Assembly (NCBI GenBank): GCA_950097015.1
Contig: CATNEN010000033.1
Coordinates: 2,666,001-2,730,000, forward strand
Origin: Macrostomum hystrix
Lineage: Eukaryota > Animalia > Platyhelminthes
DNA length: 64,000 bases
Direction of reading: 5' to 3'
Position 1 is the stretch's first letter. Each line of letters begins with the position of its first letter. This document shows positions 3,578 to 46,400 of the stretch, in pieces. A model generated the notes under the pieces. That model was not told where the DNA came from and did no database searches. It worked only from the letters and a program-made list of their open reading frames with translations. Position numbers and translations under genes: made by a program.

Positions 3578-4029
3578 TGTGCTATGTGAAGATGTTATGC
3601 TATGCTATGCTATGTCCGACTTTCAGTCTGCTATTGATTTTTCGACTTCAGCTGCTTAAATTTCTAAATCATACGATTTCGGCTCACAGGCTTTAAAAAA
3701 TAACAAAATGTAAAAAAGAAATAAAAAATATTGTTCGTTATAGCGTTATAGTTTGCACAATACATAACTTATTATCTTGGTTATTTATTTTATCATTAGA
3801 ATAATATGAACTGACTGGCGGTTATGTGGTGAACATTGACGATGAGACTTACTACAATAGCGACGTAATCGTAATCGATCAGTCTGATATATAATTTCAA
3901 GTAAAGTTTATACAAGTTTCTCATGTAAAAAACATTAATAAAACGGATTAGTTTAAAAACTAGCAAGTTTTGCCCCCCTTCGGGGAGAACTACTGGTCAG
4001 ACAAAAAATCTTGTATACTCGCTTACGTA

Positions 4030-6777
4030 TGCGTTGACTATGTGGCATCACAATGTCATCAGCAGGTAGAGGAGATGCAGCCGATGAATTGGTTGCGTCC
4101 AGATCAACGCTACAGGCAGAGCGACGACGCTTCGTGTCGTTTTCGGCTGTTGGATGTCGTTGATGTCGACGATCAAGTGGCCGATTGTGACAGAACGTCT
4201 CGAAACATCATCTGACGTCGTCGGCGACCATCAGATTGGCCTGCTGTTTGGCCAGGCGTCCATACGCATTGACGACACAGTTGCGCGATGTGTCGTGCAG
4301 TGGCACCAGCTGGTTAAGCTTGTCGGGATGCGCGTGCACATATGCCGACAGTACATTTCGACGCCCATCGCCCATGCGATAGGGCCGATCGATGACCAAC
4401 TCGGCGCCCTGCTTGACAAGCGTGCTGAAACTTGTGGAGTCACGCTGTTTGCCACGATGCGTAGGAAACAGCAGAAATTTTTCAGGCCTGACTTGGATGC
4501 TACACTCGGCGAAGTATGGCAATAGAAAGTTGTCGATCCATTGCAGTAGACATTCGCCGACTTTACGTGGCGCAGTCCAGCTTGCACCTTTTCCACGACC
4601 GCCCTTTTTGTGTGCCACTTCGGTAGGCGGCAGGACGGTGACAATGGTGGAGGACGTTGATACATCACTATTGAGTCCAGCATCCAAATAGCAACGCCGG
4701 ATCGCGACCCAAGGACGTAGTCTATTGGCATGGACAATTGCTGCACAGAAGAATGCCAGTTCACGAGTGATCGGCATAATAAATGCATTCCATTTGGCGA
4801 CAGTGTTGGCCATTCGACGTGCACATTGCCCAATGCGACCCCAGTAGCCCTTCACGGGTAGATGAGACCACGAATGTTTGGCGACCATATCAATCAGGCA
4901 GTCTAGCCGGCCGTGAATGATGCGCCATTCGTCAGCGGTCAGGAACTTATCCGTGTAGGACAGCTGGCGTTCGTCATCGCGCAGGTGATAAATATTCTCT
5001 TGCCTCTGACGAATCAATCCAATGCAAGCCTGTACATTTTAAATGGTTATTAAAGAGAAACGCATGCAGTAGCTTCTACAATTGTTCATGATATATTAAA
5101 AAACATAGTATACAACATGCGACACAACAGTACGTACTGCTCACCATGATTGATTCGATGCGGCTAGTCAAAAGTCCAGATACTCGTACTGCAGTCTGAT
5201 GATAGAGAATACCAACTTTGCGCAGGTCAGGACAGGCAGGCAATTCTGACGCGGCCTTGACAATGTCGGCATGCACGTTGGCAAACAATTTATCTGGTGG
5301 CGAGGTCAATTGGAACGCGTTCATAACACTAGGAGCACCGAAGTCGTTGTTGGCTGCTAGAAACTTCTTCGCGCCGCTCAATATGTTATGAAGCTCGTTC
5401 ATTCGCTGTCCAACAGTCGATGGTTTCCAGATATGGCGCTTCACCATCTCGTCCAAATCGAATTGGATGCGCGCTGGATTGATGAACCACATCTCGACTG
5501 TGACATTGATTGCGTGTAGGAGACGACTAGTTGTAGCATGATAGTTCCGCTGGATTGCTTTCCTACGGCTAACATGCGATGCGTTCTCTTCTGCACAGCA
5601 ATGACCCTTGAACCAGATGTCGCCGACATTGTCTAGTTGCTTGTTCATGTGTTCAGATGCAATGTGGTAGTCTGGGCCGTCGAAAACAACAAGCCGAGAC
5701 TTCTTGTGCCTCCGTTGCAATACAAGCTCATTTTTGGCCAATCGCTTCTCGTAGTCACTAACAGAATCACCAGTATTTTCCACGTCAGATTTAGAGGTCT
5801 GAGTCTCTGCTTGTCGCTGACTGACAGGGTTCAGCAAACTGACAGCATTGGTGACTCCGATTGGAACATAGTCTGATGTATACTGGAGAATTGCTTCTGT
5901 CAGATTGACCAGATTCTGCAAGCCAGTACACATGCTATTAACGCGTGGATGCTCAGCGTTGTGGGCTTTCTGCAGAATCTCGTTTAGGCCGGCCGCATTC
6001 AGACGCAGTCCATTGATAAATTCTGTTTGACAAGACAGTTACAAATATTTGTTGATTAGTTTACTATGTGTTAATGTGTAAATAATAAATGTACAGGCAT
6101 GTGCAACAATATTTTAGACCACTTACTGATCGCTGCCACATTGTCGTTGACATTAATGAATTCCGGCATCGTACTCGTTTCGTTTTGCAGTCGCTCGATG
6201 TCGTGACTGACAATATCGGTCGTGTAAGATGATGGTCCGGACCGATCGAAACTGGCCAACACCGGTGCTACTGACAGTGAGCAATGATCTGACTGAGAAG
6301 TAGACGGTATGGCAGACAATGCGTTGTTTGTAATGCGTACAGCATTGGACTGTCCAGCAGAAGACGATCCCGCAGACGACGCACACACGACAATAGGCAG
6401 CTCAATGTTTGCACCCGTGTCAATCGAATCAGACGAAGAGTCGTCGCGCTGTCACTTGACGACAGGGTTGCATTTGCTGCCTCTGTAATTGTCGGTTTAC
6501 GCTTGCATGACCTGTCAATATGTCTACTGAGCTGCTGAACACCTTTGCCACAGTATTGACAGTAAGACAAATCTGGATTGGATCTATCCCGACGTAACCG
6601 GATGATCTTCCATACAGTCCTTGTCTTGATGTCATACGATGCCGTCATTGCGGGTCGTCGAACCTCTGGGATAGTGCTCCAATCAAAAGCCGAAACAAAG
6701 TCTGAATGATTTGTACTAAAGTGCCTTGCAACATTCGTCTTCCGAATTGAAGCTTTGCAGACTGGGCACGTATCCAT
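4030..6777 (-). pseudogene. Zinc-finger + tyrosine recombinase gene, copy 1 (3 exons: 6777-6127, 6022-5145, 5029-; disrupted)
   Basis: GT-AG introns at 6126-6023 and 5144-5030 join the ORFs. YR motifs RQRQENIYHL, HKK, GDGRR, DTSRNCVVNAY are present. Lesions relative to copy 2: 2-nt insertion at ~6445, GGA>TGA at 4208-4210, and 3' truncation at ~4030. Confidence 0.75.
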
Positions 6778-7451
6778 TTCGCTGGTTATTATTTGATTTC
6801 GCTGTTGCAAAACGCTTATAACAGAAGAAATTTTACACAGATTTGTAAGCTAGTGCGCTCGGCTTCTGACTTAAGCTTCTGTCGTGACCCGTACGACCGT
6901 TTAATCACAAACTATCATTCAAGGTTTGTCTATGGTGAAATAACATAATATCGAACTCATATTAAATTTAACGTTGCTATATTGTCTACTAATAGTAGAG
7001 TAGGTAGTTTCGAACAGAATATGAGCATAAACACGAATAATTATTTGACTTCTGATTTATGTCCACCATTTCTATCTCTATGTTTAGGAAGCATTTAAAT
7101 TAGTGTTGATTATTTTAGAGGTATTTTCGCGAAAGTACATTTTCTCCGGCGAAAGAACGAAGGTAAATTTGTTAGTCCGTCCATGCAAACTCGGTGCATT
7201 CGCGAAAGCACAATGAAATGGTTCAGGAAGGACAAAGTGATATATAATAGTATACTTTCGCAAACACGACTACATGCTCCGCAGTGCCCAAGTGCGAAAA
7301 AACATAAGCTTAGCTGTTCTAATTATAGAAATACACTACGGAGATCAAAAAAGGTCATTTGGTATATCCATCCGTATTTTCGCGAAATGACCACATGAGC
7401 TGTTCTATTTTTAGAAATACACTACGGAGAAGGTCATTCGGCTATTATACA

Positions 7452-7725
7452 GACAAATCTTAAGATATGTCCGGGCATCCACAGTTTGCCATAGAAGTAC
7501 AAATCTTAAGATATGTCCGCCCATTCATTTCAATAGAAGGACAAATCTTAAGATTTGTCCTCTATTGTTTTCATATGCTAGTACCATAGACGGTTGGGTC
7601 TGGAGTGCGGCCTTGAGTAGCGGATTTCCACTTGTACATAGGGGAATCCACAGTCTAAGCTGGGGTCCACCGGACAAATCTTCAGATAGTTGGGGTCTGC
7701 AGGACAAATCTTTGACAAATCTTCG
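7452..7725. repeat. Cluster of GGACAAATCTTAAGATTTGTCC palindromes and half-sites
   Basis: Perfect 22-bp palindrome at ~7540-7561, with variants at 7452, 7499, 7672 and 7703. Confidence 0.8.
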
Positions 7726-7954
7726 ATGCATATTTTGTTGGTATTGTATAAGTAAGTCTCACCGCCAATGTACACGACATAACTACCAGTCAGTTCATAT
7801 TATTTAAATGATAAAATAAATAACCAAGATAAGAAGTTGTGTACTATTAACGATTAAAGAAATAACAAACACAAAATTATTTTTATCTTTTATTTATATA
7901 TAATTTTAAAATGGATGACCGGGTGCAGAGCAGTGCTGGCTAATGCTCACATTG

Positions 7955-14213: not shown

Positions 14214-14421
14214 GACCGCCTGTCCAAGCCTGTCCGGCAACAACTTCAATCGCCGGGGGGGTGGAGGAGTCATTTAGCTGCTCAACTCGGGTCCTCTAAC
14301 TCCTTTGCCTAATAACTTTCTATTTTTGATACCGTCAATTCCCATACCGCGCAACAGGTTTTGAAGGTTTTGAACCCGTCGTGACTGACTCTAAGGACTA
14401 CTACTCCCTCTTTCTACGAGT

Positions 14422-23182: not shown

Positions 23183-24001
23183 TCAAACGTATGCCTCCGC
23201 CTCTTCAGCTGCGGCATACAATAGGCAGTCGTCAGCTGGGTCAAATAAACAGCTACTGGCTGCCATCGCTGCCGCTGATGCTGACGCCTCCGCCTCTTCA
23301 GCTGCGGCATACAAAAGCTCGTCATCAGCTGGGTCAAACAAGCAGTTACTGGCTGCCATCGCTGCCGCTGCTGCTGACGCCTCTGCCTCTTCAGCTGCGG
23401 CATACAATAGGCAGTCGTCAGCTGGGTCAAATAAACAGCTACTGGCTGCCATCGCTGCCGCTGCTGCTGACACCTCCGCCTCTTCAGCTGCGGCATACAA
23501 AAGCTCGTCATCAGCTGGGTCAAACAAGCAGTTACTGGCTGCCATCGCTGCCGCTGCTGCTGACGCCTCTGCCTCTTCAGCTGCGGCATACAATAGGCAG
23601 TCGTCAGCTGGGTCAAATAAACAGCTACTGGCTGCCATCGCTGCCGCTGCTGCTGACGCCTCCGCCTCTTCAGCTGCGGCATACAAAAGCTCGTCGTCAG
23701 CTGACTCTAAGCAATTGGCTGCCATCGCCGCTTCGACATCTTCAGCTGCGGCATACAAAAGCTCGTCGTCAGCTGAGTCTAAGCAATTGGCTGCCATCGC
23801 CGCTTCGACCTCTTCAGCTACGGCGTATAACAAATGGTCGTCTGCCAGGCCGAATACAAAACTGTATGTTGAATTGTATGTTTCATCATACCCGTAGTCA
23901 TCATAGCCTGGCTCTTCATTCAGCTCAACGTCATCGTCGTGACAGTTGGATTTTTCCGCATCGTTTAGAGTTGGCCCTGATGATGATGTTGATGTAGGCA
24001 T
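23183..24001 (-). CDS. 272-aa acidic repeat protein, 8 x ADD(E/C/H)LLYAAAEE motif
   Basis: ATG-initiated ORF. Repeat units are 72 and 93 bp (multiples of 3). Minus-strand AATAAA at ~23125. Confidence 0.6.
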   Translation of the reverse strand: MPTSTSSSGPTLNDAEKSNCHDDDVELNEEPGYDDYGYDETYNSTYSFVFGLADDHLLYAVAEEVEAAMAANCLDSADDELLYAAAEDVEAAMAANCLESADDELLYAAAEEAEASAAAAAMAASSCLFDPADDCLLYAAAEEAEASAAAAAMAASNCLFDPADDELLYAAAEEAEVSAAAAAMAASSCLFDPADDCLLYAAAEEAEASAAAAAMAASNCLFDPADDELLYAAAEEAEASASAAAMAASSCLFDPADDCLLYAAAEEAEAYV

Positions 24002-24236
24002 GGCGAGACAATGGGGGCAGTATTTAAAATGTTGAACTTGTTTTATTTACTTCATTAATTGTCCAAAGTTTCAACTGCATTGATTACATATTCCCAATCA
24101 CATAAGATTATCAGCAAGCTTGTTACCATAGACTAGCAATAGGGTTTTTAGTTGGTTACTTTACTAAGGTAAGTGGCGTAACTTATTTACACATTTTAGA
24201 TTCTTAATTATTGTTTCAAATAAAAAAAACTACAAC

Positions 24237-24692
24237 ATGTCATCCCTGGGTGGGCGGCACAATGGCGGAGATCGAGATCGAGATATCGACAGAGAGGATC
24301 ACAACTCTGGCAACGACAAACCGATCTCGTGCCCTACCGTCAGTAGCAGCACAGATGTCGTGATTGGCACTGAGCGACGTCGACGAAGGCACAGCTCGGA
24401 TAGTAGTTCAGACTCGGATTTTGCTATTCTGCCTTCACGTCAACGTGTTCAGTACGTATTGCATCGTCCAGGTGTCGTGCGAATTTACAATCAGAGATTT
24501 TCTATTGTGAACGCCAATCCGACACGTGATTTAGCCGGCCAATTGCAACTGCCGCAGCATGCGCAAGTGACCGATATACAGTCACCAATTGTAAGCAGTA
24601 GCAGCAGCATCAACAATGGCGGCACTGGCACTGAAAGAGAGCGCGGTGATGCCAATCGTGCTGCAAATAACCCAGATTTGAATGACATGTAG
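24237..24692 (+). CDS. 151-aa hypothetical protein (element-borne, duplicated in inverted orientation at 36857-37306)
   Basis: ATG ORF. The second copy is near identical, with in-frame indels and one nonsense change. Confidence 0.5.
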   Translation: MSSLGGRHNGGDRDRDIDREDHNSGNDKPISCPTVSSSTDVVIGTERRRRRHSSDSSSDSDFAILPSRQRVQYVLHRPGVVRIYNQRFSIVNANPTRDLAGQLQLPQHAQVTDIQSPIVSSSSSINNGGTGTERERGDANRAANNPDLNDM

Positions 24693-25205
24693 CAATTGTT
24701 TTGTTAAGCACTGTTTCCATTGCTTATAATGAAATTAATTAACTGATTAATATAATTAGAAGTTTCATGTATTTGATTCATACGTCAGAGTATTTAAAGT
24801 CGACAGTTCATGATACCTGCAAATGTTTTAAACTAGTTTTACATACACTAGCTCTCGTTCACCTTCACGTGGTATATTCAAAGCATAAGAGTTTGCCGTC
24901 ACTATTGACAATATATTGTCGCGTTTACCATTAATCATAATCAGACGACTGATGAGATCAGTCAGTAATAAAATATTAATACGCGAACACAGATGTGTGC
25001 AGGTAGTCAATCGGTTATTATTAATACGGTTTTTATTAAATTTCACCAATACATATAGAGTATAAATATATATAGAATTTCATTGGTTGAACAAATAATC
25101 GTGCTGTTCTACAATTAGTCTGATTTGCAAAGTCGCGAGAGCAAAAATAAACGTGTAAACTATAATACATAAAATTCTGCATATAAATTCTGTATTTTAC
25201 AGCAT

Positions 25206-29483: not shown

Positions 29484-29669
29484 TGCAGCTTAAATATAGT
29501 CGTTCGCTGGCTAGCCTGCTGAATAATCGACAGAGTGGTCGTTGTGGCTGAATTTTAATTATCGATTTGCGTGCGCGCGCGCATATATTTACCTAGCACT
29601 GCTCATATCCTGTACAGAGCAGCAGTCAGACACATAGACATAGACAGACATCGTCAACTATTTCCATAT

Positions 29670-29975
29670 ATAGTATTTTCGCGAAAATACTGATATGCTC
29701 TATAAACAAAGGTAAGGGCAGTATTTTTGCAAAAGTTCTTAAAGTAGTATGCATGATTACATCTTTGGTAATTTCGCGAAAATACTGCTATGCTATTAAA
29801 CAAAGGTAGTTGGCGGTATTTTTGCAAAAGTTCTTAAAGTAGTGTGCATGATTACATCTTTGGTATTTTCGCGAAAAGACTGCTATGCTATTAAACAAAG
29901 GTAGTTGGCGGTATTTTTGCGAAAATTCTTAATGTAGTGTGCATGGCTACATCTTATGGTATTATCGCGAATGCA
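29670..29975. repeat. ~95-bp TTTTCGCGAAAA palindrome array, 4 units
   Basis: Same unit as 22245-22695. Confidence 0.9.
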
Positions 29976-30693: not shown

Positions 30694-31020
30694 CGTGAGT
30701 TCTACACAACCAACAATGTCGTGAGTGCAACAGCAGCGCGTCTAACACTAGCAGAAGTAGAATTAGAATAGGAAGCAGAGTTCTAAATGGAAAGTAAATA
30801 CAGTATTTTCGCGAAGGTAAGGGCAGTATTTTTGCAAAAGTAGCGTGACTACATCTTATGGTATTTTCGCAAATGCAGATACGTATTCTCAGACAAAGTG
30901 ACTTTTTACCATAGACAAATTTAGTGTATTTCTGTAAATTGCCAAAACTCACGAATGAGTTTTTTCGCGAAAAGACAATATGTACTATATTGAATACTTG
31001 TAAATGAAAAATAGTGTCTG

Positions 31021-31625
31021 TTTTTGCGAAAATACTGCTATGCTATTAAACACAGGTAGTTGGTGGTATTTTTGCAAAAGTTATTGAAGTAGTGTGCATG
31101 GCTACATATTATGGTATTTTCGCGAAAATACTGCTATGCTATTAAACAAAGGTAGTTGGCGGTATTTTTGCAAAAGTTATTAAAGTAGTGTGCATGGCTA
31201 CATCTTAAGGTATTTTCGCGAAAATACTGCTATGCTATTAAACAAAGGTAGTTGGCGGTATTTTTGCAAAAGTTATTAAAGTAGGTTATATGCGTGGCTA
31301 TATCTTAAGGTATTTTCGCGAAAATACTGCTATGCTATTAAACACAGGTAGTTGGCGGTATTTTTGCAAAAGTTATTAAAGTAGGTAGTTTGCGTGGCTA
31401 CATCTTATGGTATTTTCGCGAAAATACTGTTATGCTATTAAACACAGGTAGTTGGCGGTATTTTTGCAAAAGTTATTAATTAAGTAGGTTATATGCGTGG
31501 CTATATCTTAAGGTATTTTCGCGAAAATACTGCTATGCTATTAAACAAAGGTAGTTGGCGGTATTTTTGCAAAAGTTCTTAAAGTAGTGTGCATGGCTAC
31601 ATATTATGGTATTTTCGCGAATGTA
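31021..31625. repeat. 96-103-bp TTTTCGCGAAAA palindrome array, 6 full units
   Basis: Palindromes at 31114, 31210, 31310, 31410, 31513 and 31609. Confidence 0.92.
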
Positions 31626-32017
31626 GATACGTATTCTCAGACAAAGTGACTTGTACTTTTTTACCATCGACAAATTTAGTATATTTCTCTGCTAATTGTC
31701 AATAATCACGAATGATTTTTTCGTGTATCTTCGGCTTTTAAGAAAACGAGAATAGTTTAATCTCAGTTTAATCAGATGATAATCAAATGATTTCATTTGT
31801 CAATTTATTTAATTACTAACGAAATAATCACAGTGTTGACAATCATTAGCATCTTAACAATATATAAGAGAGCAACAAACAGAACATATGAGATTCTCGG
31901 TTGTAAAGGGACGGGTATTAGTGGGGGTATCACAATTGACACAATTGATAATAGTTTGGCAAATCAGACAATCAGCACATATTAAGTCAGGTGACACGAC
32001 TGGGACAATATGAGCAT

Positions 32018-35000
32018 TCAGATGTCCAGTCTAGTTCTCGAACTGATCAGGCGCCCAGATCGCGTCCTGTATTCCGTTCGACGAACCATGAGTAGCTCAG
32101 AATCCGAGCTGGTCTCATTGTCATTGCTGACGTGCTGTTGTTCACCATCATCACCTTCTTCGTCGATATCGTCGTGAACGTTGCCTTGTCCAGCCGATGC
32201 TCCAAACATCGGCGGTTGACTAAGACTGCGTCGTCTAGACGATGTAGACGATATAGGCGATGGTGTTGCTGAATCGATGGCCGGCTTTGTCGACTCTGTG
32301 TTGTCCGTTGTTGAACATCTAGGACTAACCGTAGCGGGTCGCATTGTCGACATTCGAGGTCGCTTCTTGTCAGTGGCCTTGCAAATGGACGACCGTCGAG
32401 TGCGTCGCTTGCGTGTGCGTTGACTATGTGGCATCACAATGTCATCAGCAGGTAGAGGAGATGCAGCCGATGAATTGGTTGCGTCCAGATCAACGCTACA
32501 GGCGGCAGAGCGACGACGATTCGTGTCGTTTTCGGCTGTTGGATGTCGTTGATGTCGACGATCAAGTGGCCGATTGTGACAGAATGTCTCGAAGCATCCT
32601 CTGACGTCGTCGGCGACCATCAGATTGGCCTGCTGTTTGGCCAGGCGTCCATACGCATTCACGACACAGTTGCGCGATGTGTCGTACAGAGGCACCAGCT
32701 GGTCTAGCTTGTCGGGATGCGCGTGCACATAGGCCGACAGTACATTTCGACGACCATCGCCCATGCGATAGGGCCGATCGATGACCAACTCGGCGCCCTG
32801 CTTGACAAGCGTGCTGAAACTTGTCGAGTCACGCTGCTTGCCACGATGCGTAGGAAACAGCAGACATTTGCCTGGCCTGACATGGATGTTGCACTCGGCG
32901 AAGTATGGCAATAGAAAGTTGTCTATCCATTGCAGTAGACATTCGCCGACTTTGCGTGGCGCAGTCCAGCTTGCACCTTTACCACGACCGCCCTTTTTGT
33001 GTGCCACTTCGGTAGGCGGCAGGACTGTGACAATGGTGGAGGACGTTGATACGCCGCTATTGAGTGCAGCATCCAAATAGCAACGCCGGATCGCGACCCA
33101 AGGACGTAGTCGATTGGCATGGACAATTGCTGCACAGAAGAAGGCCAGTTCACGCGTGATCGGCATAATAAATGTATTCCATTTGCCGACGACGTTGGCC
33201 ATTCGACGTGCACATTGTCCAATGCGACCCCAGTAGCCCTTCACGGGTAGATGAGACCACTGATGTTTGGCGACCATATCAATCAGGCAGTCTAGCCGGT
33301 TGTGAATGATGCGCCATTCGTCAGCGGTCAGGAACTTATCCGTGTAGGACAGCTGGCGTTCGTCATCGCGCAGGTGATAAATATTCTCTTGCCGCTGACG
33401 AATCAATCCAATGCAAGCCTGTACATGTTAAAGGGTTATGAAAGAGAAAGTACATACAGTAGCTTCTACAATTGTTCGTGATATATCAACTAACATAGTA
33501 TACAATATGCGACACAACAACACTGCTCACCATGATTGATTCGATGCGGCTAGTCAACAGACCAGATACTGCAGTCTGATGATAGAGAATACCATCTTGC
33601 GCGGGTCAGGACAGGCAGGCAATTCTGACGCGGCCTTGACAATGTCGGCATGCACGTTGGCAAACAATCCATCTGGTGGCGAGGTCAATTGGAACGCGTT
33701 CATAACACTAGGAGCACCGAAGTCGTTGTTGGCTGCTAGAAACTTCTTCGCACCGCTCAATATGTTATGAAGCTCGTTCATTCGCTGTCCAACAGTCGAT
33801 GGTTTCCAGACATGGCGCTTCACCATCTCGTCCAAATCGAATTGGATGCGCGCTGGATTGATGAACCACATCTCGACTGTGACATTGATTGCGTGTAGGA
33901 GACGACTAGTTGTAGCATGATAGTTCCGCTGGATTGCTTTCCTACGGCTAACATGCGATGCGTTCTCTTCTACACAGCAATGACCCTTGAACCAGATGTC
34001 GCCGACATTGTCTAGTTGCTTGTACATGTGTTCAGATGCAACGTGGTAGTCTGGGCCGTCGAAAACAACAAGCCGAGACTTCTTGTGCCTCCGTTGCAAT
34101 ACAAGCTCCTCTTCACTGACAGAATCATCAGTATTTTCCACGTCAGATTTAGAGGTCTGAGTCTCTGCTTGTCGCTGACTGACAGCATTGGTGACTCCGA
34201 CCGGAACATAGTCTGACGTATACTGGAGAATTGCTTCTGTCAGATTGACCAGATTCTGCAAGCTAGTACACACGCGCGGATGCTCAGCGTTGTGGGCTTT
34301 CTGCAGAATCTCGTTGAGGCCGGCCGCATTCAGACGCAGTCCATTGATAAACTCTGTTTGACAGGAAAGTTATAAATATTTGTTGATTATTTTTTTGTCT
34401 TTGTGTAAATTTAAAAATGTAAAGGCATGTACAACAATATTTTAGACCACTTACTGATCGCTGCCACATTGTCGTTGGCATTATCGAATTCTGGCATCGT
34501 ACTCGTTTCGTTTTGCAGTCGCTCGATGTCGTGACTGACAATATCGGCCGTGTAAGATGGTCCGGCACGATCGAAACTAGCCAACACCGGTGCTACTAAA
34601 GTAGACGGTGTGACAGACGATGCACTGTTGATAATGCGTACAGCATTGGACTGTCCAGCAGAAGACGATCCCGCAGAAGACGCTAACACGACAATAGGCG
34701 GCTCAATGTTTGCACCCGCGTCTATCGAATCAGACGAAGAGTCGTCGCTGTCACTTGACGAACGGGTTGCATTTGCTGCCTCTGTAATTGCCGGTTTACG
34801 CTTGCATGTCCTGGCAATGTGTTTACTGAGATGCTGAACACCTTTGCCACAGTATTGACAATAAGACAAAGATGCATCGGATCCATCCCGACGTAACCGG
34901 ATGATCTTCAATACGGTCTTTGCCTTGACGTCATACGATGCAGTCGCTGCGGGTCGTTGAACCTCCGGGATCGTGCTCCAATCGAAAGCCGAGACGAAGT

Positions 35001-35076
35001 CTGAATGATTTGTAAGAAAGTGCCTTACAACATTCGTCTTCCAAAATGAAGCTTTGCAGACTGGGCACGTATCCAT
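32018..35076 (-). CDS. Zinc-finger + tyrosine recombinase gene, copy 2 (exons 35076-34455, 34353-33531, 33418-32018; ~948 aa if one 1-nt deletion at ~33595 is corrected)
   Basis: GT-AG introns of 101 and 112 nt are conserved with copy 1. Domain order: zinc fingers, core-binding-like WKPSTVGQRMNEL, catalytic R..HK..R..Y. The C-terminus is complete, with a minus-strand AATAAA at ~31805. Confidence 0.75.
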
Positions 35077-35657
35077 TTCGCTGGTTACTATTTAATTTAG
35101 CTGTTCCAAAGTGCTTATGACAGAAGAACGTTTACACAGATTTGTAAGCGAGCGCGCTCGGCTTCTGACTCAAGCTGCTATCGTGACCCGTACGACAGTT
35201 TAATCACATAAACTATCATTCAAGGTTGGTCTATGGCGAAAAACCATAATATTGAACTCATAATAAATTTAACGTTGCTATATTGTCTACTCATAGTAGA
35301 GTAGTTAGTTTCGAACAGCATATTAACATAAACACTAATAATTAATTGATTTCTGAATGTCTATCTATATGTTGAAAGGGCACTTAAATTATTGTTGATT
35401 ATTCCAGAGGTATTTTTGCGAAAGTACATATATATTCTCAAACAAAGGTTAATGCAGTCTTTTTGTGAAAATACTTTTGTGTTAATATGATTACTCTATC
35501 TAGTGGTATTTTCGCGAAAAGACACTAGTGTCCCATATAAAAGTAAAGGCATTATCAAAAGAAGGTAAATGCCGTAAACGTTAATAATAATGGGGGTTCA
35601 CAAAAAGTAGTTTGGTAGTAATTAGTAGTAAATTATTAGCAGATTTTTTTTAATTGA

Positions 35658-35741
35658 GAAAAATGCGTAGTGCCGACTGGGATTCGAACCCGAGCCACTG
35701 CTACTAAAAAGGAATGCTTTAGACCTGCATGCCAGATCACT
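35658..35741 (-). ncRNA. tRNA-like Pol III cassette, inverted copy of 18597-18680
   Basis: The rc reads AGTGATCTGGCATGCAGGTCTAAAGC...GGGTTCGAATCCCAGTCGGCACTACGCATTTTTC. Flanks are homologous to ~18450-18800. Confidence 0.55.
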
Positions 35742-36309
35742 TGCAATTGAAATGTGTGTTATCTGGTTATTTATATTGATTTTCTTTCGGATGTGGGATT
35801 TTTAATGATTTTTGTCTGCAAATAGTGGAATCTTGATCACGTTTTCAATATTTTCTAACAGAACAATAAGATTAATTGAGAGAATATATATAGTACTGCT
35901 GATTATTACTATTATTGTTAGTATTTTCGCGAAATACGGATACGTATTCAAACGAAGGTAGAACAGTATTTTTGCAAAAGCACTTTAAGTACTTTAGTTA
36001 CATAGATGATGTTTTCGCAAAATGCTTTAAGTGAAGTAGCAATGTTAATACAGGGCTATGTATTTTCGCGAAAGTACGTTTTCGCCTTATACCTTTGCGA
36101 AAGAACGAAGGTAATAAGTTAGTCCGTCCATGCAAACTCGGTGCATTCGCGAAAGCACAATGAAATGAAATGAAAGCACTAGTGATATATATTAGTACTT
36201 TCGCAAACACGACTATATGCTCCGCAGTGCCCGATTGCAAAAAGACAAGCTTAGCTGTTCTAATTATAGAAATACACTAGGGAGATCAAAAAAAAGGTCA
36301 TTCGGTCCA

Positions 36310-36470
36310 CTTAACTGATTATATTGTCCGCCCATTGATTTCTATATAAGTGATAATATTGTCTGTCCACGTACTGATAATATTGTCCGCCTACTGATAA
36401 TATTGTCCTCTTACTGATAATATTGTCCGCTTACTGATAATATTGTCCGCTTACTGATAATATTGTCCCA
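36310..36470. repeat. ~20-bp tandem repeat ctgataatattgtcc(gctta)
   Basis: About 8 units. Occupies the position held by the GGACAAATCTTAAGATTTGTCC cluster in the 7.4-7.6 kb copy. Confidence 0.85.
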
Positions 36471-36856
36471 TGTAGTTAATATGCTAGTGCCATAGACGGC
36501 TGGGTCTGGAGTGTGGCCTTGAGTAGCGGATTTCAGATTTTCGGCACTTGTACATAGGGGAATCCAAGTCTAAGCTGGGGTCCACCGGACAAAATAATCA
36601 GTTTGTTGGGGTCCGCAGGACATTATTATCAATGCAAATTTTGTCAATAGTGACGGGAAACTGTATTATGCTAAGAATATACCACGTAGGTAGCAGCAGC
36701 TAGACTATGTAAAAGTAGTTTAAAACATTTTGCAGGCATCATGAACTGTCGACTTTGAATACTCAGATTTGTTAATCAAATACCAACTTTTAATTATTTT
36801 AATCAGTTAATTAATTTCATTATAACTAATGGCAACAGTGCTTAACAAAAGAATTG

Positions 36857-37306
36857 CTAGATGTCATTCAAATCTGGGTTATTTGCAGCACGATTGGCAT
36901 TGCCGCGCTCTCTTTCAGTGCCAGTGCCGCCATTGTTGCTGCTGCTGCTACTGCTTACAATTGGTGACTGTATATCGGTCACTTGCGCATGCTGCGGCAG
37001 TTACAATTGGCCGGCTAAATCACGTGTCGGATTGGCGTTCACAATAGAAAATCTCTGATTGTAAATTCGCACGACACCTGGACGATGCAATACGTACTGA
37101 ACACGTTGACGTGAAGGCAGAATAGCAAAATCGGAGTCTGAACTACTATCCGAGCTGTGCCTTCGTCGACGTCGCTCAGTGCCTATCGCGACATCCGTGC
37201 TGCTACTGACGGTAGGGCACGAGATGGGTTTGTCATTGCCAGAGTTGTGATCCTCTCTGTCGATATCTCGATCTCCGCCATTGTGCCGCCCACCCAGGGA
37301 TGACAT
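36857..37306 (-). pseudogene. Copy of the 24237-24692 ORF with premature stop (CAA>TAA at 37001-37003)
   Basis: Near-identical reverse complement of 24237-24692 with homologous flanks. Confidence 0.75.
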
Positions 37307-37623
37307 GTCGTCGTTTTTTATTTGAAACAATAATTTATCAGCTAAAATGTGTAAATAAGTTACGCAACTTAACTGAGTAAAGTAAATAACTAAAAAACCC
37401 GATTGCTAGTCTATGGTAACCAGCTTGCTGATAATCTTATGTTGTTAAGAATAAGCATTCTTGTTTGTATTTTTTTGTTTGCAAACGTTCAATATATTTT
37501 TTTATTCGTTTTAGAACACGTTTTTTCGCAAAAATATTTTCGTCATCGTATCGTTAGTATTTTGGCAAAAACTGCCATTATTTTTCATTCATAATAGTAT
37601 TCAATATAGTACACAGTATATAG

Positions 37624-38738: not shown

Positions 38739-39972
38739 TTGTTCTGGCCACCCACCCACCCCGGTGCAGTGATGCCCGAGTTGGCCAGCCAGCCGGAGCC
38801 GCTGACGTACGTCAGAGCGAATTCCACAGTTCTTCTGGGCTGCACAGTGCGCGGCAGCACCTCGGCTCTCCAGTGCGGCTACAGGCGCCGCTCTGCCGAT
38901 AAGATCCTATTTGTGCCCAACAATAGCGTTATCGGGCCCGGCGTGCGTTGCCTTAGCAACGGTATCGAAGTCCAGACTCAACTAGTGGAATCGGCATCGG
39001 ATTTGGCTGAGTATCAGTTCTTCTGCAAGGCTGTTACCAATAGCAAATTTGCTCTGATTGGTTCGCCATTTCAAGTGAAGATTATCGGTGGGTTCGTAAT
39101 AATTCGAAAAAATTCGAAATTCGAAATTCGAAAAAATTCTTACTCGTATTCTTACTGATCTTATTCTTACTGTATTTTCAAGTAGTCTTTATGCTGTACA
39201 TTAAAAGCTGCAATTTACTGTAACGCTGGTTAGTGACAGTGGACTGTAATGCTGGGTTGTGACAGTGGACTGTAATGCTGGTTAGTGACAGTGGACTGTA
39301 ACGCTGGTTAGTGACAGTGGACTGTAATGCTGGTTAGTGACAGTGGACTGTAATGCTGGTTAGTGACAGTGGACTGTAATGCTGGGTTGTGACAGTGGAC
39401 TGTAATGCTGGTTAGTGACAGTGGACTGTAATGCTGGTTAGTGACAGTGGACTGTAATGCTGGTTAGTGACAGTGGACTGTAATGCTGGTTAGTGACAGT
39501 GGACTGTAATGCTGGTTAGTGACAGTGGACTGTAATGCTGGGTTGTGACAGTGGACTGTAATGCTGGTTAGTGACAGTGGACTGTAATGCTGGTTAGTGA
39601 CAGTGGACTGTAATGCTGGTTAGTGACAGTGGACTGTAATGCTGGGTAGAGACAGTGGACTGTAACGCTGGTTAGTGACAGTGGACTGTAATGCTGGTTA
39701 GTGACAGTGGACTGTAATGCTGGTTAGTGACAGTGGACTGTAATGTTTGGTTGTGACAGTGCATTGCAATAACATTTTGTTTTGCTTTAAAATCTAACCA
39801 TTTCCTTACTCGGAAAATTCAGAAATCCAGCCATTCAGTGACGCTGGGCCTACGCGCCAGCAGAAGGAATGCCTGAAGGGCAACAAAGTTCAAATTGAAT
39901 GCCGGCCGCCGCATTCCGTGCCACCGGCCGATGTCACCTTTACGGTGAATGGTGCGCCATTGACGCCGCTGG
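38739..39972 (+). CDS. Two internal exons (~38739-39087 and 39823-39972) of an Ig-superfamily cell-surface protein (CDON/BOC/Ihog- or contactin-like)
   Basis: Exon A has VLLGCTV...YQFFCKA (Ig B and F strand cysteines) and ends ATC G|GT. Exon B (phase 1, 150 nt) reads EIQPF...VQIECRPPHSVPPADVTFTVNG. The start of exon A is uncertain. Confidence 0.7.
39222..39758. repeat. 26-bp intronic tandem minisatellite gctggttagtgacagtggactgtaat
   Basis: Direct reading. Confidence 0.95.
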
Positions 39973-43311: not shown

Positions 43312-43414
43312 TCAGCTGCTGCTTGTGGGGAATCCGCATGCCAATTAGAATATTAAATATGCAACCGGAGAACAGGCCTTGTACTGCGCCGCTTCAATTG
43401 AAACAGGGCCGAGA

Positions 43415-46400
43415 CAGGATGAGAGAATGAAAGAATGAAAAAGTTAGAGGGTGAGAGAGGATGAGAGAGGATGAGAGAGGATGAGAGAAGCTGAGTGAAG
43501 ATGAGAGGATGAGAGATGAGAGATGATGAGAGAGGATGAGAGAGGATGAGAGGATGAAAGGGGATGAGAGGATGAGAGAGGATGAGTGAAGATGAGAGAG
43601 GATGAGAGGATGAAAGAGGATGAGAGGATGAGAGAGGATGAGAGGATTAGAGGATGAGAGAGGACGAGTGAAGATGAGAGGATGAGAGATGAGAGATGAT
43701 GAGAGAGGATGAGAGGATGAAAGGGGATGAGAGGATGAGAGAGGATGAGTGAAAATGAGAGAGGATGAGAGGATGAAAGAGGATGAGAGGATGAGAGAGG
43801 ATGAGAGGATGAAAGAGGATGAGAGGATGAGAGAGGATGAGTGAAGATGAGAGAGGATGAGAGATGAGAGATGACGAGAGAGGATGAGAGAGGATAGAGA
43901 GGATGAGAGGATGAAAGAGGATGAGAGGATGAGAGAGGATGAGAGAATGAGAGAGGATGAGAGGATGAGAGAGGATGAGAGAGGATGAGAGAGGAAGAGA
44001 GGATGAGAGAGGATGAGAGAGGATGAGAGAGGATGAGAGGATGAGAGAGGATCAGAGGATGAGAGGATGAGAGAGGATGAGAGGATGAGAGAGGATGAGA
44101 GAGGATGAGAGAATAAGAGAGGATGAGAGGATGGGAGAGGATGAGAGGATGAGAGAGGATGAGAGAGGATGAGAGAATAAGAGAGGATGAGAGGATGAGA
44201 GGATGAGAGAGGATGAGAGAGGATGAGAGAATAAGAGAGGATGAGAGGATGAGAGGATGAGAGAGGATGAGAGAGGATGAGAGAGGATGAGAGAGGATGA
44301 GAGGATGAGAGAGGATGAGAGAGGATGATGAGAGAATAAGAGAGGATGAGAGAGGATGAGAGAGGATGAGAGAGGATGAGAGAGGATGAGAGGATGAAAG
44401 AGGATGAGAGGATGAGAGAGGATGAGTGAAGATGAGAGAGGATGAGAGATGAGAGATGACGAGAGAGGATGAGAGAGGATGAGAGAGGATGAGAGGATGA
44501 AAGAGGATGAGAGGATGAGAGAGGATGAGAGAGGATGAGAGAGGATGAGAGGATGAGAGAGGATGAGAGGATGAAAGAGGATGAGAGGATGAGAGAGGAT
44601 GAGTGAAGATGAGAGAGGATGAGAGATGAGAGATGACGAGAGAGGATGAGAGAGGATGAGAGGATGAAAGAGGATGAGAGGATGAGAGAGGATGAGAGAG
44701 GATGAGAGAGGATGAGAGAGGATGAGAGAGGATGAGAGGATGAGAGAGGATGAGAGAGGATGAGAGAGGAAGAGAGGATGAGAGAGGTTGAGAGAGGATG
44801 AGAGAGGATGAGAGGATGAGAGAGGATGAGAGGATGAGAGAGGAAGAGAGGATGAGAGAGGATGAGAGAGGATGAGAGAGGATGAGAGGATGAGAGAGGA
44901 TGAGAGGATGAGAGGATGAGAGAGGATGAGAGGATGAGAGAGGATGAGAGAGGATGAGAGAATAAGAGAGGATGAGAGGATGGGAGAGGATGAGAGGATG
45001 AGAGAGGATGAGAGAGGATGAGAGAATAAGAGAGGATGAGAGGATGAGAGGATGAGAGAGGATGAGAGAGGATGAGAGAATAAGAGAGGATGAGAGGATG
45101 AGAGGATGAGAGAGGATGAGAGAGGATGAGAGAGGATGAGAGAGGATGAGAGGATGAGAGAGGATGAGAGAGGATGAGAGAATAAGAGAGGATGAGAGAG
45201 GATGAGAGAGGATGAGAGAGGATGAGAGAGGATGAGAGGATGAAAGAGGATGAGAGGATGAGAGAGGATGAGTGAAGATGAGAGAGGATGAGAGATGAGA
45301 GATGACGAGAGAGGATGAGAGAGGATGAGAGAGGATGAGAGGATGAAAGAGGATGAGAGGATGAGAGAGGATGAGAGGATGAAAGAGGATGAGAGGATGA
45401 GAGAGGATGAGTGAAGATGAGAGAGGATGAGAGATGAGAGATGACGAGAGAGGATGAGAGAGGATGAGAGGATGAAAGAGGATGAGAGGATGAGAGAGGA
45501 TGAGAGAGGATGAGAGGATGAGAGAGGATGAGAGAGGATGAGAGAGGATGAGAGGATGAGAGAGGATGAGAGAGGATGAGAGAGGAAGAGAGGATGAGAG
45601 AGGTTGAGAGAGGATGAGAGAGGATAAGAGGATGAGAGAGGATGAGAGGATGAGAGAGGAAGAGAGGATGAGAGAGGATGAGAGAGGATGAGAGAGGATG
45701 AGAGGATGAGAGAGGATGAGAGGATGAGAGGATGAGAGAGGATGAGAGGATGAGAGAGGATGAGAGAGGATGAGAGAATAAGAGAGGATGAGAGGATGGG
45801 AGAGGATGAGAGGATGAGAGAGGATGAGAGAGGATGAGAGAATAAGAGAGGATGAGAGGATGAGAGGATGAGAGAGGATGAGAGAGGATGAGAGAATAAG
45901 AGAGGATGAGAGGATGAGAGGATGAGAGAGGATGAGAGAGGATGAGAGAGGATGAGAGAGGATGAGAGGATGAGAGAGGATGAGAGAGGATGAGAGGATG
46001 AGAGAATGAGAGAGGATCAGGGAGGATCAGAGACAATGCGCGGCTGGCTGACAGTTCGCCGCATGCAGCGGCCAGTGTGTCGAGAGTCAGCAGCGCCCCT
46101 CCCCCTGATGGCACGGAGAAGCAGCTGGGCGCAGAGGGTCTACAATGGTGTTGAAGGCATTGAAATCGTGAAAGGCATAGTGCTAGAAAGTTGACAAGTT
46201 TAGCTACTACGAGCTATTTCATATCATCTCGCATATTCGTAGAAGCAGGATTTAGCGATCGCGTATGAGCAAGGGAGCGCTGAGCAATTCAGTTTCGAGT
46301 TTGTGGCCTGCAAAGTGTAAATTTTTCATCGCCGTATCTCCCAGCTGCGCACAATGTGCCGTCTCCCAGTCTCGGACCAGATCCAATCTATAAGAATGTT

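What the first reader, a model, noticed from the sequence alone, without database searches (positions are those of the whole stretch)
32018..35076. Three-exon double-zinc-finger tyrosine recombinase with a non-canonical catalytic set, present twice
SEEN: six ORFs in the track collapse into two copies of one gene once two conserved GT-AG introns (101-115 nt) are removed (...AAI|KFINGL... and ...ESIM|ACIGLIRQR...). Domain order is two Zn fingers, a linker, a core-binding-like helix (WKPSTVGQRMNEL) and a catalytic domain. The catalytic positions are R (RQRQENIYHL), K (HKK), R (GDGRR in place of HxxR), T in place of His/Trp (DTS) and Y (NAY). I counted about 13 aa differences over the 269 shared exon-3 residues. 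Copy 2 has one 1-nt frameshift; copy 1 has three lesions. KNOWN: YRs use R-K-H-R-H/W-Y, and the two His positions tolerate substitution. INFERENCE: this is a recently functional, eukaryote-adapted integrase. The single indel in copy 2 could be an assembly error, or be bypassed by the in-frame ATG|GTATTC donor at ~33593.
Basis: partly seen in the sequence, partly recalled or inferred. Interest (0 to 1): 0.8.

Follow-up and report, generated by a model that had tools for sequence, protein, structure and literature searches.

The report
Zinc-finger tyrosine recombinase transposon copies
Two decayed copies of a very rare animal-type mobile element whose single three-exon gene joins two zinc fingers to a very divergent tyrosine recombinase that lacks both active-site histidines, so it is probably an unclassified branch of the Crypton-like DNA transposons.

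Summary
The sequence facts hold. A minus-strand gene of three exons (35076..32018) recurs at 4019..7738 at 90.6% identity. Both GT-AG introns are conserved. Copy 2 has one 1-nt deletion and copy 1 has three lesions. All three exon products are collinear with a 1084-aa Macrostomum lignano protein, which supports the gene model.

No family library, PDB sequence search or word search recognises the protein. A full HMMER scan of 1.84 billion representatives found only four relatives.

Tyrosine-recombinase (YR) ancestry is nevertheless supported at remote-homology level:
- Profile-profile alignment to 83 YRs is collinear over both domains (score 36, P about 3e-4, above all 260 shuffles).
- About 20 of the top 32 Foldseek PDB hits are XerD, XerH, Cre, integrase, topoisomerase IB or protelomerase, although none is significant.
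- The family-invariant R103, K141, R223/R224 and Y256 fall at or next to R-I, Lys-beta, R-II and the nucleophile.

The histidine positions hold G/D and T.

dN/dS of 0.23 in the catalytic exon and 7 of 9 in-frame coding indels point to recent function. Flanking arrays of a GGACA-core motif may be binding sites.

My best reading is a new lineage of Crypton-like YR-only transposon. It is moderately interesting. Activity and termini are untested.

The parts
32018..35076 (-). Copy 2 coding region: three exons and two introns, a 948-codon model broken by one 1-nt deletion
   Evidence: Collinear with P0009.
34455..35076 (-). Copy 2 exon 1. It encodes a C2H2 finger (C4-H25, 35002-35067), a second CxxC...H...C finger (C73-C91, 34804-34860) and an acidic/Ser-rich linker.
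   Evidence: Both fingers are conserved in P0009 residues 114-192. Pfam gives only weak zf hits.
34354..34454 (-). Intron 1, 101 nt, GTAAGT..CAG, phase 1. Copy 1 equivalent is 6023-6126 (104 nt).
   Evidence: 17.8% divergence between the copies, against 2.8-8.8% in the exons.
33531..34353 (-). Copy 2 exon 2: linker plus a core-binding-like domain, including WKPSTVGQRMNEL at 33770-33808
   Evidence: In hhalign this region aligns to XerD residues 8-100.
33594..33596 (-). Site of the 1-nt deletion in copy 2 relative to copy 1. The shifted frame stops at 33556-33554. The correct frame continues GILYHQTAVSGLLTSRIESIM.
33419..33530 (-). Intron 2, 112 nt, GTGAGC..CAG, phase 0. Copy 1 equivalent is 5030-5144 (115 nt).
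   Evidence: The M. lignano models P0001 and P0009 differ by 10 aa exactly at this junction.
32609..33334 (-). Catalytic domain (exon-3 residues 29-270). R103 is 33112-33110. K141 is 32998-32996. G220 and D221 are 32761-32756. R223 and R224 are 32752-32747. T247 is 32680-32678. Y256 is 32653-32651.
   Evidence: Codons verified. Conservation. Alignment to XerD R148, K172, R247, H270, Y279.
32021..32608 (-). Low-complexity Ser/Arg/Thr/Asp-rich C-terminal tail with a basic cluster, RTRKRRTRR (32393-32419), that looks like a nuclear localisation signal. Absent from copy 1 below 4019.
   Evidence: The NLS reading is inference.
32003..32011 (-). A single ATATTGTCC motif 7 nt after the stop codon, inverted relative to the upstream array. 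Candidate 3' subterminal binding site.
   Evidence: 8 matches in the window against 0.4 expected; 6 are in the upstream array and 1 is here.
36313..36470 (-). Seven tandem 20-bp units, GGACAATATTATCAGTA(AGC), about 1.25 kb upstream of the ATG of copy 2
   Evidence: 9 matches against 0.13 expected
36587..36644 (-). Two further motif copies in the opposite orientation, and the 5' limit of homology between the copies (about 36644 in copy 2, about 7738 in copy 1)
35430..36059 (.). About 630 bp present only in copy 2: an unrelated repeat with a B-box-like GGTTCGAATCC, also found at 18439-18710. It is a secondary insertion and not part of the element.
   Evidence: ARAGORN calls no tRNA.
4019..7738 (-). 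Copy 1. Exon 1 is 6127-6777, with a 2-nt insertion at 6448-6449. Exon 2 is 5145-6022 and is intact. Exon 3 is 4019-5029, with TGA at 4208-4210 and truncation at 4019.
7451..7723 (-). Copy 1 upstream arrays: three near-palindromes, GGACA(A/T)ATCTTAAGATTTGTCC, at 7451-7560, plus three AAGATTTGTC(C/A) units at 7672-7723. They share the GGACA/TGTCC core with copy 2 but have different flanking bases.
   Evidence: 9 matches against 1.4 expected

Best explanation
These are two defective copies of a DNA transposon that carries one gene, a tyrosine recombinase (YR), and no reverse transcriptase. Operationally that makes it Crypton-like. The host is an unsampled, TE-rich eukaryote, probably an invertebrate.

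The protein has these parts, from N to C terminus:
- two zinc fingers;
- an acidic linker;
- a core-binding-type helical domain;
- a YR catalytic domain;
- a basic, NLS-like tail.

The catalytic domain keeps the four residues that matter most for YR chemistry: R-I (R103), Lys-beta (K141), R-II (R223 or R224) and the tyrosine nucleophile (Y256). The two histidine positions are replaced by G/D and by Thr.

Inferred mechanism:
1. The protein enters the nucleus.
2. It binds the GGACA-core repeats that lie in inverted orientation at the two ends of the element. The zinc fingers and the core-binding domain would make these contacts.
3. It cuts and rejoins DNA through a 3'-phosphotyrosyl intermediate. 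The element would be excised as a circle and reinserted elsewhere.

Shown here: the gene structure, the copies and their lesions, selection on the coding sequence, family conservation, and remote homology to YRs. Inferred: catalysis, binding to the repeats, and the mode of transposition.
For: **Gene model and copies.**

**Independent insertions.** The flanks differ immediately outside about 36644/7738 and 4019. No other collinear homology exists at the 28.4-kb offset. This argues for separate insertions, not a segmental duplication.

**Selection.** Exon 3 has dN/dS 0.23 (p = 4e-6). Exons differ by 2.8-8.8%, against 11.7-17.8% for the introns and the upstream region. Seven of nine coding indels are in frame.

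**Relatives.** P0009 (M. lignano, 1084 aa) matches exon 1 (5e-24), exon 2 (7e-29) and exon 3 (2e-77) in order. M. lignano has at least seven UniRef entries in two clusters. Six of them are at 90% identity or more to one another, which fits a multi-copy element.

**YR homology.**
- hhalign of the family against 83 YRs scores 34.5 (P 2e-4). The maximum of 160 shuffles is 30.6.
- The two-domain alignment scores 36.2 over 281 columns and covers XerD 8-293. One hundred block shuffles give 17.1 +/- 3.2, maximum 29.0.
- R103 aligns with R148, R223 with R247, T247 with H270 and Y256 with Y279. K141 lies 3 residues from K172, in the predicted beta-hairpin loop.
- These residues are invariant in every family member that covers them.
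- About 20 of the top 32 Foldseek PDB hits are XerD, XerH, Cre/Tre, integrase, TopIB or TelA. Integrases, TopIB and VLF-1 are among the top BFVD hits.

**Tolerance of the substitutions.** In Cre only Tyr and Lys are strictly required. The His-II and His/Trp-III positions tolerate many substitutions, and H289G stays moderately active (PMC2943603).

**Motif arrays.**
Against: - No curated profile or PDB sequence search detects a YR domain in any family member.
- hhalign probability is only 41-46%. It falls to score 19.8 (P 0.08) against a thin 4-sequence YR profile, and to 19.2 against a pre-built HMM of the same 83 sequences.
- The AF2 model is mediocre (pLDDT 59.8, pTM 0.57). Foldseek E-values are 0.3 or worse and TM-scores about 0.2.
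- If R224 rather than R223 is R-II, an Asp sits at the His-II position, and that substitution inactivates Cre.
- Only two copies are visible, both broken. The 3' terminus, any target-site repeats and mobility itself are not established.
- The last three motifs are covered by only three lineages.
Confidence: 0.7

Rival explanations
1. It is a host gene family derived from a recombinase, that is, a domesticated or exapted zinc-finger DNA-binding protein. Two local pseudogene paralogues are visible here. It is not a mobile element.
For: Only two copies are seen here and the termini are undefined. UniRef annotates the M. lignano relatives as ordinary proteins. Purifying selection fits a host gene as well as it fits a transposase. 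Crypton recombinases have been domesticated repeatedly (PMC3212892).
Against: - Both copies are broken and lie among LINE, mariner and satellite DNA.
- Homology stops abruptly at different flanks.
- About 1.5 kb of non-coding upstream sequence with copy-specific repeat arrays travels with the gene.
- Near-identical multiple copies exist in M. lignano.
- Known domesticated Crypton derivatives have lost the catalytic residues, whereas here R, K, R and Y are invariant.
Confidence: 0.15
2. It is not a tyrosine recombinase at all. On this view it is an unrelated zinc-finger protein whose helix-rich C-terminal domain resembles the YR motifs by chance.
For: There are no significant hits in Pfam, NCBIfam, PHROGs, PDB sequences or Foldseek. 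The hhalign probability is below 50% and depends on the depth of the profile. Both histidines and the Glu after R-I are missing.
Against: - The real alignment beats all 260 shuffles, with z of about 4.5-9.
- It is collinear over both domains.
- Three different profile set-ups give the same register.
- The aligned catalytic columns are the family-invariant ones.
- Foldseek's best-ranked hits in two libraries are dominated by the YR/TopIB superfamily.
- T247 to Y256 is 9 residues, as H270 to Y279 is in XerD (invariant columns). R-II to T247 is 23-24 residues, against 23 in XerD.
Confidence: 0.1
3. It is the integrase of an endogenous large DNA virus or of a giant cargo-carrying element, and the 28 kb between the two direct copies is its cargo.
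For: The two copies are direct repeats 28.4 kb apart. VLF-1 and giant-virus proteins appear among the weak BFVD hits.
Against: - The intervening DNA holds a LINE, a mariner remnant, satellites and ORFs with no viral or family hits.
- No relative exists in IMG/VR.
- The copies differ by about 9% and carry different end motifs, so they are not the two ends of one recent element.
Confidence: 0.03

Closest known systems
[quoted passage not shown]
   Same: A single recombinase gene and no reverse transcriptase. A eukaryotic host. Spliceosomal introns. No long terminal repeats. Multi-copy. The proposed circle-excision and reinsertion mechanism applies equally.
   Different: - No detectable similarity to DUF3504, which animal Cryptons match at E of 8e-12 or better (Pfam scans).
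- No GCR1_C domain.
- N-terminal double zinc finger and a long C-terminal tail, whereas animal Cryptons have no extra domains.
- The His of the R-H-R-Y tetrad is absent.
- Arrays of GGACA-core repeats flank the gene, whereas animal Cryptons show no terminal repeats.
Bacterial and phage tyrosine recombinases (XerC/XerD, XerH, Cre, lambda Int)
   Same: The best profile-profile and fold matches. The core-binding plus catalytic two-domain order. R-I, Lys-beta, R-II and Tyr in register. The spacing from His-III to Tyr is identical (9 residues). There is a large hydrophobic residue two positions before the His-III position (Y245, or L in a relative), as described for most YRs.
   Different: 12-17% identity only. 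About 70-80 extra residues between the domains. His-II is replaced by G/S/M/T (or by D in the alternative register). His/Trp-III is replaced by Thr. The Glu three residues after R-I is replaced by an invariant Pro-Trp. The protein also has zinc fingers, introns and an NLS-like tail.
Macrostomum lignano 'C2H2-type domain-containing protein' A0A1I8G604 (P0009) and its fragments annotated 'Ras-GEF domain-containing'
   Same: The same family and architecture: both fingers, the core-binding-like domain, and the NR(V/L)xPW, EVxHK, DGRR and YDTS...Y motifs. 34-44% identity across all three exons, in the same order.
   Different: A different species and subfamily. P0009 has a longer linker. It is not annotated as a recombinase or a transposon. 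Its genomic context could not be retrieved.
Type IB topoisomerases and protelomerases (vaccinia/variola TopIB, TelA)
   Same: A shared fold and the same R-K-R-Y chemistry. They have no equivalent of His-II. Vaccinia H265 tolerates Asn or Gln. They appear among the top fold hits.
   Different: No TopIB-specific N-terminal domain. The multi-copy transposon-like context and the zinc fingers argue for a recombinase and against a relaxing enzyme.

Membership tests
Tyrosine recombinase superfamily | Significant match to a curated YR profile (Pfam Phage_integrase and related models) or to a YR sequence in the PDB | tested here: not met
   No YR hit at E up to 10 for window exons, P0009, L001 or L002. 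Nothing in NCBIfam or PHROGs. Nothing in PDB phmmer or profile hmmsearch.
Tyrosine recombinase superfamily | Profile-profile homology, collinear over the core-binding and catalytic domains | tested here: met
   hhalign scores 34.5 and 36.2, P 2-3e-4, over 281 columns against XerD 8-293, above all 260 shuffles. Probability is only 41-46%, and the match is weak with a 4-sequence profile.
Tyrosine recombinase superfamily | Catalytic-domain fold superposes on solved YRs | tested here: inconclusive
   AF2 with an 8-row alignment gave pLDDT 59.8 and pTM 0.57. The best Foldseek hit is the XerD C-terminal domain at E 0.3, with TM about 0.23. About 20 of the top 32 PDB hits belong to the YR/TopIB superfamily, but none is significant.
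Tyrosine recombinase superfamily | Arg-I, Arg-II and the Tyr nucleophile are conserved and in register | tested here: met
   R103, R223 and Y256 align with XerD R148, R247 and Y279. They are invariant in all family members that cover them.
Tyrosine recombinase superfamily | Lys-beta on the beta2-beta3 hairpin | tested here: inconclusive
   K141 is the only invariant Lys. It lies in the loop between predicted strands 128-133 and 149-154. hhalign places it 3 residues from XerD K172.
Tyrosine recombinase superfamily | His-II (HxxR) and His/Trp-III | tested here: not met
   G220 (or D221) and T247 occupy these positions. Relatives have S/M/T and T. About 87% and more than 90% of YRs have His at these two positions.
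Tyrosine recombinase superfamily | Forms a covalent 3'-phosphotyrosyl DNA intermediate and recombines specific sites | not testable with these tools
   Needs biochemistry.
Crypton (YR-only DNA transposon) | The element encodes a YR and has no reverse transcriptase or RNase H | tested here: met
   The only long ORFs inside 32000-36644 are the three exons. The LINE at 14422-17856 is a separate element.
Crypton (YR-only DNA transposon) | Dispersed copies with common ends and different flanks | tested here: inconclusive
   The two copies share a 5' limit (36644 and 7738) and have different flanks. Copy 1 is 3'-truncated, so the 3' end and any short terminal direct repeats cannot be defined.
Crypton (YR-only DNA transposon) | The YR groups with CryptonA/I (similarity to DUF3504) or CryptonF (GCR1_C domain) | tested here: not met
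   No DUF3504 or GCR1_C hit at E up to 10. Animal Cryptons match DUF3504 at E of 8e-12 or better. No Crypton sequences were on hand for a direct comparison or a tree.
DIRS/Ngaro/VIPER YR retrotransposons | The YR is linked to RT/RNase H within one element | tested here: not met
   No RT lies within or next to either copy.
Domesticated Crypton-derived genes (DUF3504: KCTD1, ZMYM2-4, QRICH1) | The catalytic tetrad is lost; conserved host genes | tested here: not met
   R, K, R and Y are retained and invariant. Both local copies are pseudogenes among TEs. No DUF3504 hit.

The most novel reading that the evidence does not exclude
This may be a superfamily-level new lineage of eukaryotic tyrosine-recombinase transposons. 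It would have its own architecture (double zinc finger, then core-binding domain, then catalytic domain), a histidine-free active site (R-K-x-R-T-Y) and its own arrays of GGACA-core end sites that co-vary with the zinc-finger exon. As far as 1.84 billion proteins show, it is confined to Macrostomum-like meiofauna and a few environmental eukaryotes. It may still be active in M. lignano.
Probability: 0.4. Interest if true: 0.65.

Novelty: new variant of a known kind. Interest (0 to 1): 0.55.

Why it matters
Eukaryotic elements that carry only a tyrosine recombinase are rare and poorly understood. No eukaryotic Crypton has been reconstituted biochemically, to my knowledge; I did not check this. 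This family adds several things:
- a very divergent branch that standard annotation misses entirely; its M. lignano members are labelled 'Ras-GEF' or 'C2H2-type domain-containing';
- a natural test of how far the tyrosine-recombinase active site can drift, with both histidines gone, while staying under purifying selection;
- candidate recombinase-binding repeats, which would make the transposition mechanism directly testable in a laboratory flatworm.

A compact recombinase native to eukaryotes, with its own nuclear targeting and its own sites, could also interest tool developers. None of this overturns current views, so it is a solid but moderate novelty.

Tried and rejected
**Searches that returned nothing relevant**
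- Pfam, NCBIfam and PHROGs scans of each exon product and of relatives gave only sub-threshold zinc-finger noise.
- phmmer and profile hmmsearch against PDB sequences gave nothing relevant.
- The word-index protein search with exon 3 found nothing. The same search with the family profile found only P0004 and P0005.
- Two metagenome scans and one IMG/VR scan found no further loci.
- Alignments A3 were too divergent to build search patterns.
- Exact look-ups of P0001 and P0009 found no genomic context for M. lignano.

**Structure and profile attempts**
- Single-sequence AF2 was useless (pLDDT 36).
- hhalign against a pre-built HMM of the YR set and against a 4-sequence YR profile gave weak scores, although one search gave the same register.

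**Host identification**
- The LINE ORF2 has best hits of only 28% identity, from unnamed environmental contigs, so the host stays unknown.
- It is not human: there are no human-like features, and the nearest relatives of the gene are flatworm and environmental sequences.
- tRNA and Rfam scans of the window were empty.

**Readings rejected**
- A segmental duplication: the flanks are not collinear.
- Bypass of the frameshift by the ATG|GTATTC donor: it would remove a conserved segment.

**Step deliberately left out**
All searches were made exon by exon, by reference. In the alignments the exon products were kept as separate rows.
Full report
**1. What is in the sequence**

On the minus strand, three ORFs (34411-35076, 33554-34273, 32018-33406) join into one gene. 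Two introns with canonical ends are removed:
- intron 1: 34454..34354, 101 nt, GTAAGT...CAG;
- intron 2: 33530..33419, 112 nt, GTGAGC...CAG.

A second copy lies 28.4 kb away, at 4019-7140, at 90.6% identity. Homology resumes further upstream as far as about 7738 in copy 1 and about 36644 in copy 2. The introns of copy 1 are 104 and 115 nt and use the same splice sites.

Copy 2 carries a single 1-nt deletion at 33594-33596. This shifts the end of exon 2 into a stop at 33556-33554. In the correct frame the sequence continues GILYHQTAVSGLLTSRIESIM up to the donor.

Copy 1 has three lesions:
- a 2-nt insertion in exon 1 (6448-6449);
- TGA in place of GGA at 4210-4208;
- loss of everything 3' of 4019.

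The window is clearly eukaryotic and rich in TEs. It holds a LINE with EEP and RT domains, a mariner remnant and many minisatellites. I do not take it for human.

**2. Is the gene model real, and was it recently functional?**

All three exon products match one independently annotated protein, in order. That protein is Macrostomum lignano A0A1I8G604 (P0009, 1084 aa):
- exon 1 matches residues 114-249 (E 5e-24);
- exon 2 matches 481-640 (7e-29);
- exon 3 matches 673-950 (2e-77, 44% identity).

The segment that spans intron 2 (RIESIM|ACIGLIRQRQENIYHL) aligns without a break to RIDAVY-AQLGRVSRQQDNRYHL in P0001. P0009 and P0001 differ by 10 residues exactly at this point, which suggests an intron at the same place in the flatworm.

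Between the two window copies:
- exons differ by 2.8-8.8%, against 11.7-17.8% for the introns and the upstream region;
- dN/dS is 0.23 in the catalytic part of exon 3 (Fisher p = 4e-6), 0.57 in exon 2 and 0.68 in exon 1;
- seven of the nine coding indels are multiples of three (binomial p about 0.008, my arithmetic).

The copies therefore diverged while the reading frame was under selection, and decayed only recently.

The in-frame ATG|GTATTC donor near 33592 is real. Using it would remove 21 residues that are conserved with M. lignano. I read the frameshift as a genuine lesion or a base-calling error, not a bypass.

**3. What the protein is**

*Sequence searches.* Standard methods do not recognise it.
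- Pfam, NCBIfam and PHROGs gave no hit beyond zinc-finger noise.
- PDB sequences gave nothing relevant.
- The word-index search gave nothing.
- A full HMMER scan of 1.84 billion cluster representatives with the 280-residue catalytic part returned four proteins. Two are M. lignano clusters, one is a Logan contig (SRR31628394) and one is a contig from a brackish microbial-mat co-assembly (JGI 3300040801; PMC8605020).
- A profile search added one more Logan fragment. Further scans added nothing.

The family is thus extremely rare in public data.

*Conserved motifs.* Alignment of these members shows a small set of invariant motifs:
- xR(L/V)xPW;
- EVx(H/Q/W)K;
- (D/S)xRR;
- (Y/L)(D/G)TS followed nine residues later by Y.

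*Test 1 for tyrosine-recombinase ancestry: profile-profile alignment.* I built a YR profile from XerC, XerD, FimB, FimE, lambda Int, Cre and 77 IMG/VR integrases.
- hhalign of the family against it scored 34.5 (P 2e-4, probability 46%). This exceeded 80 column shuffles (13.1 +/- 2.4, maximum 24.4) and 80 block shuffles (18.0 +/- 3.7, maximum 30.6).
- I also used a two-domain alignment anchored on the natural protein P0009, with the window exons kept as separate rows and never joined. It scored 36.2 over 281 columns and covered XerD 8-293 collinearly. One hundred block shuffles gave 17.1 +/- 3.2, maximum 29.0.
- The register is the same in every set-up, including the weak 4-sequence comparison. 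R103 aligns with XerD R148, R223 with R247, T247 with H270 and Y256 with Y279.
- The only invariant lysine, K141, lies three residues from K172, in the loop between two predicted strands.
- The FLTADEW segment aligns with the 'LSEAQV' start of the catalytic domain. WKPSTVGQR aligns with the 'YKATSSARL' helix of the XerD N-terminal domain.

*Test 2: structure.*
- AF2 with the 8-row family alignment gave a mediocre model (pLDDT 59.8, pTM 0.57). The single-sequence model failed.
- Foldseek found nothing significant. Its best PDB hit is the XerD catalytic domain (E 0.3).
- About 20 of the top 32 PDB hits are XerD, XerH, Cre/Tre, a staphylococcal integrase, poxvirus or other topoisomerase IB, or the protelomerase TelA.
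- Integrases, topoisomerase IB and VLF-1 also rank high in the viral library.

Taken together I put about 0.9 on this being a YR-fold domain. No single test is decisive, and the profile result is sensitive to profile depth.

**4. The active site**

The true R-I is R103 in NRLRPW.

The register of the RR pair is ambiguous.
- hhalign places R223 on R-II and G220 on the first His position. Relatives have S, M or T there.
- If R224 is R-II, the first His position holds D221.

This matters because in Cre every substitution of H289 except D, E, K, R and W keeps activity, and Gly is moderately active (PMC2943603).

Other points from that paper:
- Only the Tyr and the Lys are strictly required. The His/Trp-III position tolerates several residues.
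- A large hydrophobic side chain two residues before that position usually buttresses the tyrosine helix. Here that residue is Y245, or L in the microbial-mat relative.
- Vaccinia TopIB tolerates Asn or Gln at the equivalent His.

The set R103-K141-(G220)-R223-T247-Y256 is therefore unusual but plausibly active. Its invariance across lineages that are only 22-43% identical argues that it is used. Activity itself is inference.

**5. Element structure**

The two copies share about 1.5 kb of non-coding upstream sequence. In copy 2 this is interrupted by an unrelated insertion of about 630 bp (35430-36059). That insertion carries a B-box-like GGTTCGAATCC and is also present at 18439-18710. Beyond about 36644 and 7738 the flanks are different repeats. 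No other homology is collinear at the 28.4-kb offset. This favours two separate insertions over a segmental duplication.

The upstream region holds arrays of short repeats with a GGACA/TGTCC core.
- Copy 2 has seven tandem 20-bp units, GGACAATATTATCAGTA (36313-36470), and two inverted units at 36587-36634 (9 matches against 0.13 expected).
- Copy 1 has three near-palindromes, GGACA(A/T)ATCTTAAGATTTGTCC (7451-7560), and three more half-units at 7672-7723 (9 matches against 1.4 expected).
- The 9-mer ATATTGTCC occurs eight times in 64 kb. Six are in the copy-2 array. One lies 7 nt after the stop codon of copy 2, inverted relative to the array.

Inverted protein-binding half-sites at the two ends are what a YR-mobilised element should retain. 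The palindromes of copy 1 resemble YR core sites, which are inverted arms around a short spacer (described in PMC3212892).

The flanking bases of the motif differ between the copies. The zinc-finger exon is also the most divergent one (33 of 205 residues). This hints at co-variation between the protein and its sites. It rests on one pair of copies and stays a hypothesis.

The exact 3' terminus lies somewhere between 32003 and the satellite that begins near 31726. Any terminal direct repeats cannot be defined, because copy 1 is truncated.

**6. Comparison with known systems**

Operationally this is a Crypton-type element: a YR and no reverse transcriptase. It fails the tests that tie elements to the described Crypton groups:
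- no DUF3504 similarity, which animal Cryptons show at E of 8e-12 or better;
- no GCR1_C domain;
- extra N- and C-terminal regions, whereas animal Cryptons have none;
- flanking repeats, whereas animal Cryptons show none.

It is not a DIRS/Ngaro-type retroelement, because no RT is present. It does not look like a domesticated DUF3504 gene either: the catalytic residues are kept and the copies are decayed.

I could not place it on a tree with Crypton sequences, because none were available through the tools. A literature search found no description of such a family, in flatworms or elsewhere.

**7. Verdict**

The gene is real and was recently under selection. It is very probably a tyrosine recombinase with a histidine-free active site, carried by a rare Crypton-like transposon lineage. 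Catalysis, site binding, termini and mobility remain to be shown.

That step, and HHpred on it, remain for someone else to run.

Noticed in passing
window 12360-17856 (+): An apparently intact non-LTR retrotransposon. ORF1 has 617 aa and no family hit. ORF2 has 1144 aa with endonuclease and RT domains. Its closest relatives in 5.8 billion proteins are only about 28% identical and come from unnamed environmental contigs, so the host genome is poorly represented in public data.
   Followed up: partly
window 35430-36059 and 18439-18710: A repeat of about 270-630 bp with a B-box-like GGTTCGAATCC, possibly a tRNA-derived SINE. It is inserted into the upstream region of copy 2 and present in inverted orientation at 18.4 kb. 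ARAGORN calls no tRNA.
   Followed up: partly
window 22123-22789, 29665-29971, 30958-31726: The same 96-105-bp satellite occurs at three places. One block ends about 300 bp beyond the stop codon of copy 2. Whether it belongs to the element is unknown.
   Followed up: no
window 43380-48140: An extremely strand-biased purine-rich block (GC skew up to 0.99) with 8-10-bp periodicity. It gives spurious ORFs of up to 906 aa and contains a 1.6-kb tandem duplication (45009-46603 against 46602-48136, 92%).
   Followed up: no
window 1352-2237, 23101-23803, 39087-39900, 48874-49556, 49937-51400, 56377-57343, 58777-59256, 60555-61782, 62669-63700: Nine separate minisatellite arrays with periods of 66, 93, 26, 20, 39, 21, 30, 32 and 20 bp. 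That is an unusually dense collection for 64 kb.
   Followed up: no
window 52511-54994 (+): An 827-aa uninterrupted ORF with leucine-rich repeats, in a block of about 60% GC. It is the only ORF I scanned that looks like an ordinary host gene.
   Followed up: partly
window 9492-10130 (+): A remnant of a mariner/Tc1-type DDE transposase (Transposase_1, DDE_3).
   Followed up: partly
window 24089-24914 and 36638-37453: An inverted repeat pair of about 820 bp at 91-97% identity. One arm begins right at the 5' limit of copy 2, so copy 2 may have inserted into, or next to, another repeat family.
   Followed up: no
L002 1196-1291 (Logan SRR31628394): A family member from another organism has a putative intron of about 95 nt (GTATTA...AAACAG) inside the catalytic domain. 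The window gene has no intron at that position, so intron positions differ within the family.
   Followed up: partly
L001 1150-1400 (JGI 3300040801, brackish microbial-mat co-assembly): The microbial-mat family member has a frame break between its core-binding-like and catalytic parts, and lacks about 25 residues that the others have there. It is likely a decayed copy too.
   Followed up: partly
UniRef entries of Macrostomum lignano (P0001, P0002, P0006-P0010): Fragments of this recombinase family are annotated 'Ras-GEF domain-containing protein'. That looks like an annotation artefact, because no such domain was found in the sequences scanned.
   Followed up: partly
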